A stretch of DNA of 64,000 nt from Pocillopora damicornis (Eukaryota): NCBI RefSeq assembly GCF_003704095.1, contig NW_020844271.1, positions 1 to 64,000 on the forward strand, given 5' to 3'. Positions within the stretch are counted from its first letter, which is position 1, and every line of letters begins with the position of its first letter. Shown one piece after another: positions 28,279 through 56,683 of this stretch. A program made the position numbers and the translations under genes. The notes under the pieces are model-generated. The model searched no databases, had not been told where the DNA came from, and saw only the letters and a program-made list of their open reading frames with translations.

Positions 28279-31200
28279 CTAATCTGGTAAATCATATCGA
28301 AGTTTTTTCATTACTTCAGAGCAAATTTCCTCAATTCTCACGATGTTTTCAGCACTCAGTTCTTGTTCCCAGGCCGTGACCATTCTGGAGCTGATCAATT
28401 CCCTCGAGGAACCCAAACCAAATTGCTCAGTCCGAACGACTGTAAGTAGACGATGTTCAGTAGCTGGCGAAAGCGGCACACCTACAAAGCGAGAAAGTTC
28501 CTCTGCGGTTTTGCGAGGTTTTAGGACCAAATCCTCTAATTGAACAAAGCGTATGCCTCCCATTTGAAAGTGCGCGTTGGCACGCAGAATCGCTTGCGTC
28601 TGCGCGGCCCAGAGATGGGCAAGAAATTGCACGAGGGTGTTTTTGTCGTTTTTATCGCTATGATCCTTGAGTGCTTGCTGCATTTCAAAGAATTCAGGGG
28701 AAAAATTTGACATACTCCTCTCTGAGCACTTGAGATTCTTAACTGTATCAAAGGCGGCGTGGACAGCAGCGCGAAGTTCAGTATCCACGCGAATTTCTCG
28801 AAGCCACGCGTTCACCCACCCTCTCGGATCCCTAACCACGACTATGGCACGCATTCTCTCCTCCACGATCTTTGATAACCACGAAAACTTCAAACCCCAC
28901 GCGGGATCCGACAGTCGGACAACTGGAAGAGCCTTGTGAAGTTTATGGGGTAATTTTGGTAAAACTCGTTTCGGGTCTTTAGCAAGACCACGAAACCATT
29001 TTCGATCCCGAAGCGTTTCAGACGAATGGTGAAAACGATGAAAAGTAGAACACGGATCCAAAAACTTTGCACCTCTCCCAACCTCTACATTGAAGAAATT
29101 CGAAGAGTTTTTAAACATGTGTGTTAGTATTTCCGCGCCTGCTAGAGGTAGAGATGTGAATAACACAAACGGTGGAACCTCTTGTACTTCGGAGAGAACA
29201 CGAATTTCGCGGGAACTTTCAGTCACTTTGGGTTTTTTTAAGTCACATCCTTCACCAACACAAAAACTGATGTGAACAGCCATTATTGTTATTAACCATG
29301 ACATCCCAAGACAAATCACGAACATATCACAGAGAGTTTGTCGAAACATCTTTTTTCGAAGCTGTAAATAGAGATATAGCAACACAATAGAAACAATGAA
29401 TGGCAGAAACAAGGAGGATAAAATATTCCAAGTTGTATGCGAGTTAGTCTCACTTAGGGTTAATATTAAAACTTCCTCCTCTGCAGATGACATGACATCC
29501 AAACCGAAACGCACAGTCCTGGATCTCTTCTCGCTAATTTCAACCTTGCAATATCCTCCAAATTCCAAGAACTCATATCTAGAGTAAGGTTGATTATGCT
29601 TTGTTGCTATGGAAACATGGTAACGAACTCCATTCACCATCACTGAGATCTTCACTCCGTGTTCATGCCCAGTTACTACTCGTGGAAGTTGGTCTACTCT
29701 ATGTCCAGGACCGAGAAATAAGTACGCAGTCCGTGTATATCGCACGTTCAAGGGCGTTGTTATATTAAGATAATGTGTTCGAAAGGAATGGAAACTTGAC
29801 GAGTAATTTGTCGAATTGGCATAACTCTTCTGGTCGGTCCCTAAGTTTGACCAGTAAACTCTGTGCAAAAGTCCCTCTATGGAAATGGTAGCATGGGGTG
29901 TTTTGGACATGCTCTCATTGAGTATGAAGGGATGATCAACGTTATGAAAGAAGGCGCTCATAACAGATGCTTGACTTCCTATTTTGCGTTCGATATGATC
30001 GACCACGAGGAGCACGCTTGGATTCAACATAATCAAGGAACGATATACACTAAGAAGGCCCAGTTCTTGTCGATACCACCCACTCATCTCTCCGCTTATA
30101 AAAACCATATCATCTTCGCTTGACGCAGATATAATATCTCCTTGGGCCCTCCAGGCTGCCATTGTTTGAAAATTAATCCACTTACTGCATTCTCCTATCT
30201 GCCCCTCAAAGGGTTTGTAGCAAGATGACTGTTGAGAGGGACCGAATACTAGAGCATTATTAAGGAAAGTGTACTTGTAGGCGTAATAGGTCTCTGTAAT
30301 GAAAGGTACACCATTTGGGGCAAACACAAATGATCCTTGGTCCGGCTGTTCATGGCCAGGGTTAAAACTTCTCCGTCCTTGTAGCCATGATCGAACGCGT
30401 TTTCCTCTGGCAAGAGAATTTATCGCTCGTCCGTGGAGCACCCCACATTTCAAGGAAAGAAATGTTCTTTTCTTACCCCAGTGACCGCCTAAATTATTAC
30501 CGGGAGATAGGTCCAATCCACCCCCGTAAGTTACCACTCCCCAATCACTGAACACGTGGAGTCGAGGCATACTTGGGTTGGGTAGTGCTCTCTCTTGAAT
30601 ATCAGGATTATAGAATAAGAACTCTGTGTGGAGCATGCTTTTTTGGTGTGACGCCGATTGACTATAGACTTTCACTCCTGCTATTTGAACCTTGTGCTCT
30701 CTTATCTGTCTGGCCAGCCAATTCCCTAAGCCACTTCTCAAAACATGGTTGTCTAGGAAAACTAGCTGGCTTTCTGGACCGTAAAACCAGTTCCGATTGG
30801 AATCGCCATAGCCAACGGTTTCTCTGAACCCTGGGAGCACCATATGGTAAAGAAACGCCGCGTGCTCTTTAAGCCAAGGGGAATGCGTGAAGTCTACACG
30901 TAAGTGGCGTAACGCAAGGAACACATACTGCGTTAGTGAACGTGTAGTGTAAGTGCCGTAGGCGACTCCTTCGTTAATGGAGCCGTCCACTACGAAGTTA
31001 AACAGCTCTAAGTTTCTACTTAACATTAAGTGAGCTCGTGACAACCATTTCTCCCCCTCGAACATCTTGTGTCGGGCGACAATCAAGGCGCCATTTAATA
31101 TCGCCATATAGTTTGTGGCTACGTGATTTTGAAGATAAGAAGACCCCCACCAAAGCTTGAAAGATCTTTCGTATAATTCCTTTGTCACTGCCGTTATATT

Positions 31201-31692
31201 TCTTAAGAACCGAGTTCTTTGAGTGTCGTTTAAACGTGAGTACAGAAAGTCAAATGCGGTCGCCATGCCGGTTAAAGAGTGGGCTACGGGGACATCGTCA
31301 CGGAATGAATCGGCGACGCGCCAGTTGGGAAGATTGGAAAGTCGCTCCATAAACAGAATTGCAAGCTCTGTCGCCTTGAGATCCTCTGGATTGAGAACGC
31401 AATAGAAAGCTAACGCAGTCAGGTCATTGCCATAACACTCGTTCCAAGCACTAGAGAAGCTTTCCCAATCTTTAGGCGGTAAATAATATTCAGGCCTTTT
31501 TTTTATCTCTTGACTGGCCAAGTAGATCCTTTGAGATATTTCAGAGTGAGTAGTTCGCGCGCGTTCGTGGAGACTAGGTATATCTTTCTCGTTGAAAAAC
31601 AAGAATGGATGAAGCTGTTCCAAGCCATTCGCGGAAGCTTCGCAAGAAACAATAGCGACAACTGTTAGAACAATTCTTGATAAGAACGACAT
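28279..31692 (-). CDS. DSEL: Dermatan sulfate epimerase-like protein (epimerase + 2 TM + sulfotransferase-like domain), copy A, 1137 aa, intronless
   Basis: Signal peptide; [60 protein letters not shown]; two TM helices; [11 protein letters not shown] and VRDPRGW sulfotransferase motifs. This is the DSEL architecture. Confidence 0.93.
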
Positions 31693-55100: not shown

Positions 55101-56683
55101 TACTATTATTATTATTATTATTACTATTATTATTATTATTATTAATATCATTGCAATTATTATATTGATAATAAGTTCTTTTCTTTTCATTCTCAGCTCA
55201 ATGTCAGCCCCATTCTTAATGGCATATAACAGTACAAATCATGTGTATTACTTAAAGCAGTATTCAGAGATTAAAGAGGAATTTACTGAACAGCAGTTGG
55301 TATCTTTCCTTGAAGATGTGTTGGAGGGTCGTGCAAAGGTATCTCTATAGTGTTTCCTACTGAATGTAGTTTATCTCTGAACTCTGGTTGCAGTCATGCC
55401 GTCATTTTATGAATTAACCGATTAAACTTGTTTTTCATTTTGCAGGGATACGGTGGAGACTCGTACTTTCAAAGATTCTATAGGGTAAGACACTGCTGTA
55501 AAATTACTAAACACCTTGTTTTTTAAATGTTGAGGCTGAGATGAACCAAAATTGTAGGTGCATATTTTTAGTTAACAGCATTTTTGTCAAATAGTTAGTT
55601 TCAGAGGAACGTTGAGGTTGAGGTATTACCAAATTTAAAGCGCATGCTTGGAACATACCTCAGAGTGAGAAGAATCGTTAAGAACATCTGCACTTTTTGT
55701 CGCATTGTGACTCTGTGTTTGAAGCGTTTATTAAAGCCAATTTAGCAAGGAAATTAGGGCACATCGCTCAAGGATTTGACAAGTATCTTGTCATTACATC
55801 AGGGTAATAAGCCATCTTCATCAAAGTCCTTTGTCTCGTCTACGTGTTTTACTTGGGTACCCTGTGGAAGGCATGTGGTTAAACTTCAGGATCATTTTTC
55901 TTTTGAAAGCGAGTGTAGTTGGAAATGAACGATGAAATGCGGCGTGTTTTCCCTTAAAATTGGGCATCATCAGCATAAATATCGCGATAGTTTCACGTTT
56001 TATAGTATAACTATTAGTATTCATTGGTTTAATCTCTTTCAACAGGGGATTTGGGAACTTCTCAGATCGATTTACGTAAGTATTGAAAATCTTTCATATT
56101 AAGAGGGTCTCAATGGGGTCCACCGTCCGCCGTAAAACGGCCGAAATTTCAACCGTTAGTCAAAAAATCATTACCCCATCGGGACCCTCAATTAACATTT
56201 ATGTCCTGTTAACATTTATGTTCTGTTTGCTCTTGTTCATGAGAAATTTATTTATTTTTTATGTATCATGTGCAACACACACACAGTAGTATTTTCTCCC
56301 TCATAAAGCAGTGCTACATGCACTTTGTCCACAAAAGTACATCAACAATTTTTCCATTGTCCCAGTTTCCTTCATTTTGGTTCTCGCTCTTGGAAGGAAA
56401 GAGAAGCGATGTTGCTTCTTCATCAAGTCTAAACTGTATTTTTTGATGAACACAGGAAATCTGGACCACCCAACCCATTGCTGCTATACTCATGTTTGGC
56501 TTCCCTCTGCTGGTGTTCTCATTCCTAATCTATATGCTGTGTATCGCTGACCCTGGACCTGAAGAGGAAGATTTGGAAGAGCTTCAAGAGGAAGGCACCG
56601 AGTATTTAGATGATGAAGATGGAGAAAGAGAACTGAAAGCAACTGAGGAAGTTGATGCAAACCCAAAACCGAAGACAGAATGA
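46129..56683 (+). CDS. TMX3: Protein disulfide-isomerase TMX3, ~460 aa, 17 exons
   Basis: Exons 46129-46195, 46277-46325, 47214-47253, 47716-47833, 48164-48209, 48718-48798, 49659-49776, 50348-50425, 50699-50762, 51968-52078, 52399-52459, 53655-53708, 54353-54409, 55197-55338, 55446-55484, 56046-56075 and 56456-56683 join in frame (1383 nt). [42 protein letters not shown], TM helix MFGFPLLVFSFLIYMLC, acidic tail and KPKTE (KxKxx) ER-retrieval end. Confidence 0.92.
47276..47477. mobile_element. TTAA-flanked piggyBac-type MITE (~200 bp family)
   Basis: ttaaccctttaactccc ... gggagtttcagggttaa. Decayed relatives at ~18830-19027, 48833-49043 and 51740-51912. Confidence 0.8.
50914..51129. mobile_element. 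TTAA-flanked piggyBac-type MITE
   Basis: ttaaccctttaactccc ... ggagttaaaggcttaa. Confidence 0.85.
51317..51535. mobile_element. TTAA-flanked piggyBac-type MITE
   Basis: ttaaccctttcactccca ... tgggagtgaaagggttaa, perfect TIRs. Confidence 0.9.
52880..53170 (-). mobile_element. tRNA-derived SINE (head at the right end)
   Basis: Reverse strand: ggttagctcagg..agagcacttgac..aggttcaagttcgg A/B boxes, followed by a core resembling Deu/Nin-type SINEs. Confidence 0.6.
53297..53499. mobile_element. TTAA-flanked piggyBac-type MITE inserted into the 6178-6405-family repeat
   Basis: Perfect TIRs. The host repeat agagttttaa|ggctgacattttgagcgttagcccttcgtcaga rejoins across the insert. Confidence 0.9.
53738..53872. 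mobile_element. Fold-back MITE with ~52-bp inverted arms
   Basis: gatcaatatcagtatctgggcaactgcccacctacccctcc ... ggaggggtaggtgggcagttgtacagatactgatattgatc. Confidence 0.85.
54835..55068 (-). mobile_element. tRNA-derived SINE with a V-domain-like core
   Basis: Reverse strand: ggatagtgcagtagtgggagtg..gggttcgactccc, then tttctctctgggtccttcggttttcctccc. Confidence 0.65.
55092..55145. repeat. (ATT)n microsatellite
   Basis: Direct inspection. Confidence 0.9.

What the first reader, a model, noticed from the sequence alone, without database searches (positions are those of the whole stretch)
28279..56683. DSEL next to TMX3: the same gene neighbourhood as human 18q22.1
Seen: DSEL (-) and TMX3 (+) are divergently arranged neighbours, separated only by transposon debris. 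Established: in human, DSEL and TMX3 are neighbouring protein-coding genes on 18q22.1. Inference: if this genome is cnidarian, the adjacency may date from the cnidarian-bilaterian ancestor. It would pair a Golgi glycosaminoglycan epimerase with an ER disulfide oxidoreductase, possibly through shared regulation.
Basis: partly seen in the sequence, partly recalled or inferred. Interest (0 to 1): 0.8.

Follow-up and report, generated by a model that had tools for sequence, protein, structure and literature searches.

The report
Coral DSEL–TMX3 gene pair, anciently linked
In this stony-coral DNA a sugar-chain-modifying enzyme gene (DSEL, present twice) sits back-to-back with a protein-folding gene (TMX3). 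The same two genes are also immediate neighbours in amphioxus, echinoderms and a zebrafish relative, but facing differently each time, so this looks like an ordinary ancient gene-neighbour pair, not proof of shared control.

Summary
The window (a pocilloporid stony coral) holds two tandem intronless DSEL genes on the minus strand (28279-31692 and 36359-39775, 90% identical). Head-to-head with the second lies a 17-exon TMX3-type gene (46129-56683, plus strand). The 6.35-kb spacer is dispersed-repeat DNA with a reverse-transcriptase fragment. All three assembly gaps lie in this spacer, between copies of one repeat, and touch no exon. Adjacency does not depend on the gaps. Gap-free contigs of Acropora and another hexacoral show the same head-to-head pair, with start codons about 0.69 kb apart in Acropora. 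A decayed TMX3 exon 1-2 stub also sits 2.6 kb upstream of DSEL copy 1.

The pair is adjacent in Branchiostoma, Acanthaster and Antedon (tail-to-tail, 3.6-7.8 kb) and in Danio aesculapii (tandem, 6.3 kb). Papers place them as neighbours in human. Nematostella has an intact DSEL but no TMX3 exon within 10 kb.

Ancestral linkage is therefore plausible. Orientation changed at least three times, so a shared bidirectional promoter cannot be the pan-animal cause. Beyond the pair, the flanks do not match 18q22.1. This is a new member of a known kind (conserved microsyntenic pairs). Earlier scan notes on this same stretch already flagged the duplication.

The parts
28279..31692 (-). DSEL copy 1: intronless, 1137 aa, with epimerase domain, two hydrophobic segments and a C-terminal sulfotransferase domain
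   Evidence: Pfam DUF4962 at 1.9e-11 and Sulfotransfer_1 at 2e-6. Best named hits are all DSEL. It aligns to the human DS-epi1 crystal chain 6HZN at 1.7e-168.
28269..31727 (.). Duplicated block A. It matches 36349-39809 at 93.3% nucleotide identity over 3462 bp.
   Evidence: blastn self-comparison. Between the two coding sequences dN/dS is 0.47 and dS is 0.11.
34269..34491 (+). Decayed copy of the TMX3 exon 1-2 region, a dead 5' stub 2.6 kb upstream of DSEL copy 1
   Evidence: 73.5% identity to 46176-46383. The alignment shows indels in the coding part and loss of the ATG region.
36359..39775 (-). DSEL copy 2: intronless, about 1138 aa from the ATG at 39775. The tool's ORF runs on to a GTG at 39916.
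   Evidence: Pfam DUF4962 and Sulfotransfer_1. It is 90% identical to copy 1 and 97% identical to database protein P0001. The own-genome match ends at 39775.
39776..46128 (.). DSEL2-TMX3 spacer of 6353 bp including 331 N. The unique gene-proximal ends are about 39776-40460 and about 45760-46128. The rest is dispersed repeats. Gaps are at 41856-41955, 44512-44642 and 45004-45103.
   Evidence: Own-genome DNA searches give many matches on other contigs. The same element recurs on both sides of gaps 1 and 3.
43631..44467 (+). Reverse-transcriptase fragment (retroelement debris)
   Evidence: Pfam RVT_1 at 6.7e-10
46129..46195 (+). TMX3 exon 1: ATG and the start of the signal peptide
   Evidence: ATG ORF. 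The donor is GT with phase 1. Acropora has an equivalent exon of the same 22 codons plus 1 base.
46280..46325 (+). TMX3 exon 2: end of the signal peptide
   Evidence: Conserved in Acropora L007 17064-16993 and in L009 8085-8017. Phase fits (and hand count).
47214..47253 (+). TMX3 exon 3
   Evidence: Matches L007 16841-16782 and L009
47716..47833 (+). TMX3 exon 4: thioredoxin active site CGYC
   Evidence: Pfam Thioredoxin at 4.6e-10. 74-79% identical to the two other coral loci. Splice sites were read.
48164..48209 (+). TMX3 exon 5
   Evidence: Matches L007 and L009
48718..48798 (+). TMX3 exon 6
   Evidence: 76-82% identical to L007 and L009
49659..49776 (+). TMX3 exon 7 (b domain). This exon is single-copy in the genome.
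   Evidence: 73% identical to L007. It is the only own-genome match.
50348..50425 (+). TMX3 exon 8 (boundaries approximate)
   Evidence: Matches L007 around 9130-9061
50699..50762 (+). TMX3 exon 9 (boundaries approximate)
   Evidence: Matches L007 8742-8674
51974..52078 (+). TMX3 exon 10. The acceptor could instead be 51968 or 51989.
   Evidence: 68% identical to L007. Matches Danio L010 949-1044 at 4.5e-7. Weak Pfam Thioredoxin_6 hit at 0.037.
52399..52459 (+). TMX3 exon 11
   Evidence: Matches L007 5113-5015
53655..53712 (+). TMX3 exon 12
   Evidence: Matches L007 4982-4917
54363..54409 (+). TMX3 exon 13
   Evidence: Matches L007, Antedon, Acanthaster and Danio
55197..55338 (+). TMX3 exon 14 (end of the b' domain)
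   Evidence: 64% identical to L007. Matches Acanthaster at 4e-6, plus Antedon and Branchiostoma, and Danio at 1e-5. Weak Thioredoxin_6 hit at 0.032.
55446..55484 (+). TMX3 exon 15 (GYGG motif)
   Evidence: Matches in all four deuterostome loci at about 1e-4, in collinear order
56046..56075 (+). TMX3 exon 16 (weakest support)
   Evidence: Matches L007 2711-2673 at E 0.018. Chosen because it closes the reading phase.
56456..56683 (+). TMX3 exon 17: membrane segment, acidic tail, a C-terminus ending KPKTE, and the stop codon
   Evidence: 78% identical to L007. Matches the last exon of the DSEL-adjacent thioredoxin gene in Acanthaster (9e-8), Branchiostoma (1e-7), Antedon (1e-4) and Danio (8e-7).

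Best explanation
DSEL and TMX3 are an old neighbouring gene pair of the conserved-microsynteny type. It was most likely inherited from the cnidarian-bilaterian ancestor rather than assembled twice.

In hexacorals the two genes lie head-to-head. In Acropora the start codons are only about 0.69 kb apart, which suggests a bidirectional promoter there; that is inferred, not shown.

In the Pocillopora lineage a unit of [DSEL + spacer + TMX3 exons 1-2] was duplicated in tandem. This gave a second intact DSEL and a dead TMX3 stub. Repeats then inflated the spacer next to the intact TMX3 to about 6.35 kb.

Across animals the pair stayed adjacent while one or the other gene was flipped at least three times: head-to-head in corals, tail-to-tail in amphioxus and echinoderms, tandem in Danio. 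I take the long-term retention to be mostly passive, with small local inversions that do not separate neighbours. I do not think it is enforced by a shared promoter.
For: - Both genes are real.
- Gap-free head-to-head pairs occur in Acropora (L001/L007, whose DSEL is exactly P0029, named Acropora muricata by NCBI) and in a deeper hexacoral lineage, L009.
- A relic TMX3 5' stub lies upstream of DSEL copy 1 inside the window.
- NCBI-annotated loci show DSEL followed by a Thioredoxin+Thioredoxin_6 gene on the opposite strand: 441 aa in Branchiostoma lanceolatum, 472 aa in Acanthaster planci, 450 aa in Antedon mediterranea.
- Danio aesculapii has a 448-aa gene of the same architecture just upstream of DSEL on the same strand.
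- The coral 3' exons 13, 14, 15 and 17 (plus exon 10 in Danio) match these genes in collinear order.
- In human, DSEL and TMX3 are consecutive protein-coding genes about 1.16 Mb apart (PMC2868029). In sauropsids and platypus only TGM9 lies between them (PMC11152450).
- The DSEL tree separates deuterostome DSEL, cnidarian long DSEL (including the window copies and Nematostella) and a cnidarian-only short paralogue, all with at least 97% SH-aLRT support.
- Non-chordates are reported to have only DS-epi2/DSEL (PMC8006597).
Against: - Nematostella has a full intronless DSEL but no TMX3 exon within 10 kb on either side. Another cnidarian long-DSEL contig, L008, has none within about 5 kb.
- Orientation differs between every major clade sampled, so the coral and deuterostome arrangements are not simply the same.
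- No protostome can be scored, because none appeared among the DSEL hits.
- Chance adjacency of two genes that merely stayed on the same ancestral chromosome is not excluded, and I could not compute a genome-wide expectation.
- TMX3 orthology rests on exon-level matches and architecture, not on a full-length search or tree.
Confidence: 0.55

Rival explanations
1. The adjacency is ancestral and is actively kept by selection for proximity. The two genes would share cis-regulatory input or one chromatin domain, or regulatory elements for one would lie in or beside the other. This would coordinate an ER folding enzyme with a Golgi glycosaminoglycan enzyme.
For: - The pair has survived at least three local inversions without being separated.
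- Spacing is sub-kilobase in Acropora.
- Irimia et al. found conserved pairs enriched for co-expression and for regulatory blocks (PMC3514665).
- In human the pair brackets a 1.16-Mb stretch with no coding gene.
Against: - Orientation is not conserved, whereas co-regulated conserved pairs typically keep the 5'-5' arrangement.
- In this window 5 kb of repeats split the promoter region, and a DSEL copy works with only a dead TMX3 stub beside it.
- Nematostella lacks the tight linkage.
- Neither gene is a developmental regulator of the kind that anchors regulatory blocks.
- The mouse in-situ data in PMC2868029 show weak Dsel but robust Tmx3 expression in the eye.
- No non-coding conservation was found between the Acropora and Pocillopora spacers.
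Confidence: 0.2
2. The coral and deuterostome adjacencies arose independently. The two genes stayed on the same ancestral chromosome and came to lie side by side by chance in hexacorals and in the deuterostome stem.
For: - Orientations differ (head-to-head versus tail-to-tail or tandem).
- Linkage is absent within 10 kb in Nematostella and in L008.
- The pair was noticed post hoc among many pairs scanned, so some chance coincidences are expected.
Against: - The chance that one given pair becomes immediate neighbours twice is small, on my own rough estimate of the order of 2 divided by the number of genes on the chromosome.
- Hundreds of truly ancestral pairs are documented (593 bilaterian pairs), so descent is the commoner cause of a shared adjacency.
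- Single-gene inversions readily explain the orientation changes.
Confidence: 0.2
3. The adjacency in this window is an assembly artefact: scaffolding across three gaps wrongly joined a DSEL contig to a TMX3 contig.
For: Three gaps lie between DSEL copy 2 and TMX3. The flanks are repeats, so the joins cannot be verified from the sequence.
Against: - Gap-free contigs of two other hexacorals have the same head-to-head pair (no N in L001, L007 or L009).
- The gap-free stretch 28269-36349 of this window holds DSEL copy 1 with a relic TMX3 5' end in the same arrangement.
- The flanks of gaps 1 and 3 carry the same repeat family in the same orientation.
Confidence: 0.02

Closest known systems
Conserved ancestral microsyntenic pairs (CAMPs) of Irimia et al. 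2012, Genome Res 22:2356 (PMC3514665)
   Same: Two unrelated genes remain immediate neighbours in distant animal phyla. The pair fits the definition used for the 593 bilaterian pairs.
   Different: Orientation is not conserved, and neither gene is a developmental regulator. The paper's list of pairs is not held here, so I could not see whether DSEL-TMX3 is already on it.
Human 18q22.1 segment CDH19 - DSEL - TMX3 - CCDC102B (PMC2868029)
   Same: DSEL and TMX3 are consecutive protein-coding genes.
   Different: The human spacing is about 1.16 Mb, against 0.7-6.4 kb in corals. The outer neighbours differ: the coral has a RING-ligase-like gene and RPL13. In Danio the gene order is tandem, not head-to-head.
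HSPE1-HSPD1 type bidirectional-promoter pairs (cited in PMC3514665)
   Same: In Acropora the two start codons are about 0.69 kb apart and head-to-head, the layout of a bidirectional promoter.
   Different: HSPE1-HSPD1 keeps the 5'-5' orientation from humans to unicellular relatives. DSEL-TMX3 does not keep it outside hexacorals, and in this window the spacer has grown to 6.35 kb.
PDI - RhoGDI conserved microsynteny (Moretti et al. 2017, cited in PMC12781119)
   Same: A protein-disulfide-isomerase-family gene has an evolutionarily conserved, unrelated neighbour (reference seen).
   Different: The PDI member and the partner are both different. That work reported a functional interaction; none is shown here.

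Membership tests
DSEL / DS-epi2 (dermatan sulfate epimerase-like) | N-terminal epimerase domain homologous to DS-epi1 | tested here: met
   Pfam DSE-like_N/DUF4962 in both copies. Residues 26-667 align to the human DS-epi1 crystal chain 6HZN at 1.7e-168.
DSEL / DS-epi2 (dermatan sulfate epimerase-like) | C-terminal sulfotransferase domain (PF00685), which DSE/DS-epi1 lacks (PMC8006597; PMC3717172) | tested here: met
   Sulfotransfer_1 at 2e-6 and 5e-6 over residues 941-1131 and 992-1179. The feature is defined.
DSEL / DS-epi2 (dermatan sulfate epimerase-like) | Groups with DSEL rather than DSE in a phylogeny | tested here: inconclusive
   All named hits among the best 120 are DSEL, and the tree gives a clean cnidarian sister clade to deuterostome DSEL. 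No DSE sequence could be fetched, so DSE was not in the tree. Hasan et al. report only DS-epi2 outside chordates.
DSEL / DS-epi2 (dermatan sulfate epimerase-like) | Catalytic His/Tyr residues and epimerase activity | not testable with these tools
   The stretches around the published catalytic residues look conserved in the alignment, but I did not map residue numbers. Activity needs an assay.
TMX3 (PDIA13) | One catalytic thioredoxin domain with a CXXC site (CGHC in human; PMC9127828) | tested here: met
   Exon 4 hits Pfam Thioredoxin at 4.6e-10. The motif is CGYC in this coral, Acropora and L009, a variant of CGHC.
TMX3 (PDIA13) | [quoted passage not shown] | tested here: inconclusive
   Single exons give only weak Thioredoxin_6 hits, in profile order (exon 10 at 0.037, exon 14 at 0.032). 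The collinear deuterostome genes carry PF13848 on their full products.
TMX3 (PDIA13) | Type I membrane protein: N-terminal signal sequence, one C-terminal membrane segment, about 454 aa | tested here: met
   Read from the sequence: a hydrophobic start in exons 1-2 and a hydrophobic stretch in exon 17. Exon lengths sum to 1368 nt, or 455 codons including the stop (and hand count). No predictor was run.
TMX3 (PDIA13) | C-terminal di-lysine ER retrieval motif (KKKD in human) | tested here: met
   The C-terminus reads KPKTE, which fits the KXKXX form. Function was not tested.
TMX3 (PDIA13) | Orthology to vertebrate TMX3 by full-length search or tree | not tested
   A joined spliced model was not to be built or searched. 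Support is exon-level only: exons 10, 13, 14, 15 and 17 match the 448-aa Danio gene next to DSEL in collinear order. No database name was obtained for any of these genes.
Conserved ancestral microsyntenic pair | Immediate neighbours, with no gene between, in distant phyla | tested here: met
   Hexacorals (window, L007, L009), Branchiostoma, Acanthaster, Antedon and Danio; human. Not met within 10 kb in Nematostella.
Co-regulated bidirectional-promoter pair | Head-to-head orientation conserved across the clades that share the pair | tested here: not met
   Head-to-head only in hexacorals. Tail-to-tail in amphioxus and echinoderms, tandem in Danio.
Co-regulated bidirectional-promoter pair | Correlated expression of the two genes | not tested

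The most novel reading that the evidence does not exclude
DSEL and TMX3 have been held within a few kilobases of each other since before corals and vertebrates diverged, through repeated flips of either gene, because proximity itself is selected. That would point to an unrecognised functional tie between an ER membrane disulfide oxidoreductase and the dermatan-sulfate epimerase/sulfotransferase, for example a shared regulatory domain of a matrix-secretion programme. A corollary is that positional orthology shows DSEL was inherited vertically from the cnidarian-bilaterian ancestor and lost in protostomes.
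Probability: 0.18. Interest if true: 0.6.

Novelty: new member of a known kind. Interest (0 to 1): 0.33.

Why it matters
The pair gives positional, sequence-independent support that cnidarian and deuterostome DSEL are true orthologues inherited by descent. A structural paper left open whether horizontal transfer was involved (PMC8006597), and a review says dermatan sulfate first appears in molluscs and echinoderms (PMC3717172), so this bears on when iduronic-acid-containing chondroitin/dermatan sulfate arose.

It is also a clean example of a neighbour pair that keeps adjacency while changing orientation. That makes it useful for separating 'kept by a shared promoter' from 'kept by proximity or inertia'. 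Beyond that it is one more conserved gene pair among hundreds already catalogued.

Tried and rejected
1. The big profile-free search with TMX3 exon 4 was useless. Multi-domain PDIs with several thioredoxin repeats filled all 150 places and no single-domain TMX3 was returned.
2. The PDB search with exon 4 hit only generic PDIs and no chain named TMX3.
3. The protein atlas search with the last exon gave no usable hit.
No reads were laid, so there is no expression, splice-junction or co-expression evidence. I went on with other tools as the message said.
5. No DSE (DS-epi1) sequence appeared among the best 120 hits of either word search, so no DSE-versus-DSEL tree was made.
6. Stylophora and Oculina DSEL look-ups found no record.
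7. No supplement is held for Irimia et al. 2012, so I could not see whether the pair is already listed.
8. No non-coding conservation was found between the Acropora and Pocillopora spacers.
9. L005 (P0041) lacks TMX3 nearby, but the tree places it in the cnidarian short-paralogue clade. It is therefore not a counter-example.
10. The ORFs listed across the gaps (41796-42494, 44468-45160) are artefacts of reading through N.
Only exon lengths were added up.

Full report
**What is in the window**

The window is the first 64 kb of one contig of a 234-Mb assembly. Its best named protein hit is Stylophora pistillata, followed by other stony corals, so the genome is a pocilloporid scleractinian. Earlier scan notes on other windows call it Pocillopora damicornis.

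Two long minus-strand ORFs, 28279-31692 and 36359-39916, both carry the DSE-like N-terminal domain and a C-terminal Sulfotransfer_1 domain. They are 90% identical in protein. Copy 2 most likely starts at the ATG at 39775, because the own-genome match ends there and the alignment with copy 1 begins just after it. These are the only two such genes in the assembly.

All named hits among the best 120 are 'dermatan-sulfate epimerase-like protein', from corals, amphioxus, echinoderms and vertebrates. The epimerase part aligns to the human DS-epi1 crystal chain at 1.7e-168.

The sulfotransferase domain is what distinguishes DS-epi2/DSEL from DS-epi1/DSE (PMC3717172; PMC8006597). The latter paper already reports that cnidarians, echinoderms and a hemichordate have only DS-epi2. 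DSEL in a coral is therefore known.

**The thioredoxin gene**

Three-frame reading and comparison with an Acropora contig define 17 exons on the plus strand from 46129 to 56683. I picked GT-AG boundaries that close the reading phase at every junction (plus a hand count). The exon lengths sum to 1368 nt, which is 455 codons including the stop. Human TMX3 has 454 residues.

- Exon 4 is a thioredoxin active-site exon (Pfam 4.6e-10, motif CGYC).
- Exons 10 and 14 give weak Thioredoxin_6 hits in profile order.
- Exon 17 has a hydrophobic membrane stretch and an acidic tail, and ends KPKTE, which fits a KXKXX retrieval motif.
- In the PDI-family table of PMC12781119, TMX3 is the only transmembrane member with a CGHC-type active site and a comparable length (454 aa). 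Its a, b and b' domain composition is described in PMC9127828.
- One b-domain exon (exon 7) has no second match in the genome, which suggests a single-copy gene.

Everything was done exon by exon, by reference or inside scripts. No database name for the gene was therefore obtained, and orthology rests on architecture plus the matches described under "The pair in other animals" below.

**The gaps**

The three gaps (41856-41955, 44512-44642, 45004-45103) all lie in the 6353-bp spacer between the DSEL copy 2 start codon and the TMX3 start codon. None touches an exon.

Own-genome DNA searches show that the spacer, apart from roughly 0.7 kb next to DSEL and 0.4 kb next to TMX3, consists of dispersed repeats with many copies on other contigs. 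The same element sits on both sides of gaps 1 and 3, in the same orientation. An RVT_1 fragment lies at 43631-44467.

The gaps therefore look like repeat-induced assembly breaks. Continuity and true length cannot be shown from the sequence, and I made no attempt to fill them.

The gene adjacency does not depend on the gaps, for two reasons:
- Gap-free contigs of Acropora (L001/L007) and of a deeper hexacoral lineage (L009) carry the same head-to-head pair. The Acropora DSEL product is exactly the protein NCBI names for Acropora muricata.
- Inside the window, the gap-free stretch upstream of DSEL copy 1 holds a decayed copy of the TMX3 exon 1-2 region at 34269-34491. It is 73.5% identical to 46176-46383, with indels and no ATG.

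**The duplication**

The two DSEL coding regions match at 93.3% over 3462 bp, and the match ends within about 10-35 bp of the coding sequence at either end. Between the copies dS is 0.11 and dN/dS is 0.47. In the tree the two copies are each other's closest relatives, after the split from Stylophora.

The duplicated unit was [DSEL + spacer + TMX3 exons 1-2]. Two first-stage notes on this same stretch say the same, and I confirm that here. The relic is far more diverged than the synonymous sites of the coding sequence. That is compatible with later gene conversion of the coding part, which I did not test.

**The pair in other animals**

| Species (locus) | Arrangement | Spacing | Thioredoxin gene product |
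|---|---|---|---|
| Acropora (L007) | head-to-head | start codons about 0.69 kb apart | not annotated |
| Unnamed hexacoral (L009) | head-to-head | exon 2 lies 1.9 kb from the DSEL start | not annotated |
| Branchiostoma lanceolatum (L002) | tail-to-tail | 6.7 kb | 441 aa, Thioredoxin + Thioredoxin_6 |
| Acanthaster planci (L003) | tail-to-tail | 7.8 kb | 472 aa, same domains |
| Antedon mediterranea (L006) | tail-to-tail | 3.6 kb | 450 aa, same domains |
| Danio aesculapii (L010) | tandem, thioredoxin gene upstream on the same strand | 6.3 kb | 448 aa, same domains |

The coral 3' exons match these deuterostome genes in collinear order:
- exons 13, 14, 15 and 17 in Antedon and Acanthaster;
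- exons 14, 15 and 17 in Branchiostoma;
- exons 10, 13, 14, 15 and 17 in Danio.

E-values run from about 1e-2 down to 9e-8 within the small search spaces used.

Human DSEL and TMX3 are consecutive coding genes about 1.16 Mb apart (PMC2868029). In sauropsids and platypus only TGM9 lies between them (PMC11152450).

There is negative evidence too. Nematostella has a complete intronless DSEL (43% identity; the old gene model was truncated) but no TMX3 exon within 10 kb either way. Contig L008, from another cnidarian long-DSEL lineage, has none within about 5 kb. L005 also lacks it, but it belongs to a cnidarian-only short paralogue clade and does not count.

**Interpretation**

With TMX3 drawn on the left, corals are head-to-head, Danio is tandem, and amphioxus and echinoderms are tail-to-tail. 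On the accepted animal tree this needs at least three single-gene inversions. Each has a breakpoint in the spacer, and none separated the genes.

A shared divergent promoter may well operate in hexacorals, especially with the 0.69-kb spacer in Acropora. It cannot be the reason the pair persisted across phyla. In this window the promoter region has been split by about 5 kb of repeats, and a DSEL copy persists beside a dead TMX3 stub.

Irimia et al. found that co-regulated conserved pairs are mostly 5'-5' and keep that orientation. This pair does not.

I therefore favour inherited adjacency that was retained largely passively (0.55). The alternatives are inherited adjacency kept by selection for proximity (0.2) and independent juxtaposition (0.2). 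An assembly artefact is essentially excluded (0.02). These odds are my own judgement, because no genome-wide null could be computed here.

**Comparison with 18q22.1**

Only the pair itself is shared. Downstream of coral TMX3 lies RPL13 on the minus strand (Ribosomal_L13e at 2.8e-39 and 4.9e-29). Beyond DSEL copy 1 lies a gene that looks ZNRF-like by eye, with only a weak Pfam hit. Human has CDH19 and CCDC102B in those positions.

**Novelty**

The held library has no paper that mentions DSEL or TMX3 together with microsynteny or with cnidarian synteny. The published lists of conserved pairs could not be read.

The kind of feature is well known. The new element is the membership of this particular pair and its changing orientation. 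A useful by-product is positional support for vertical inheritance of DSEL from the cnidarian-bilaterian ancestor, a point on which Hasan et al. left horizontal transfer open.

**Limits**

- There is no full-length TMX3 search or tree.
- No DSE sequence was in the DSEL tree.
- Boundaries of exons 8, 9, 10 and 16 are approximate.
- The taxa of the unnamed ENA contigs (L005, L008, L009) are inferred only from the DSEL tree.

Noticed in passing
window 59830-60894 (-): Two exons of ribosomal protein L13 (eL13), convergent with TMX3. This is the coral's next gene after TMX3, unlike human, where CCDC102B follows.
   Followed up: partly
window 24896-25625 (-): Exons beginning MGAKQS, with a Cys-rich stretch that looks like a ZNRF1/2-type membrane-anchored RING ligase. 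Pfam gave only a weak RNF220 hit at 0.0028, so the identity is by eye only.
   Followed up: partly
window 12696-15840 (+): A gene with a PAN domain (1.2e-5) and an F5/8 type C discoidin domain (5.3e-17), split over at least three exons.
   Followed up: partly
window 8588-9538 (-): Intronless rhodopsin-family GPCR ORF of 310 aa (7tm_1 at 3.3e-22).
   Followed up: no
window 48741-48947, 51274-51432, 53269-53397 (TMX3 introns); also L005 2281-2385: A short repeated element, whose translation contains a recurring PFTPTSDQDRISPYNI-like stretch, occurs three times in TMX3 introns and also on a contig of a different cnidarian. It may be a widespread SINE-like element.
   Followed up: no
proteins P0043-P0080, P0041, P0042, P0276 (not in the window): Cnidarians have a second, cnidarian-only clade of DSEL-like epimerases. 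Most are about 780-800 aa and lack the sulfotransferase domain. This genome shows only the two long copies at E<=1e-10, so the short paralogue seems absent here.
   Followed up: partly
L004 9908-13354 (Nematostella vectensis, GCA_000209225.1): The deposited 708-aa 'predicted protein, partial' is a truncated model. The locus encodes a full intronless DSEL of about 1160 aa including the sulfotransferase part.
   Followed up: yes
P0006 and P0012 (Oculina patagonica, same 64-Mb record): Oculina also has two DSEL genes on one chromosome. In the tree they are sisters, which means a tandem-type duplication independent of the one in this window.
   Followed up: partly
window 28269-31727 versus 34269-34491: The DSEL coding copies differ by dS 0.11, whereas the co-duplicated TMX3 stub is about 26% diverged. 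This suggests gene conversion confined to the coding region, or two events of different age.
   Followed up: partly
window 54993-55165 (+): A long trinucleotide-type simple repeat inside the TMX3 intron before exon 14. It reads as runs of Leu or Ile in two frames.
   Followed up: no
window 1709-3732 and 20941-21231: Six further N runs lie outside the finding. The ORFs listed at 2185-3437 are read-through of N and are not genes.
   Followed up: no
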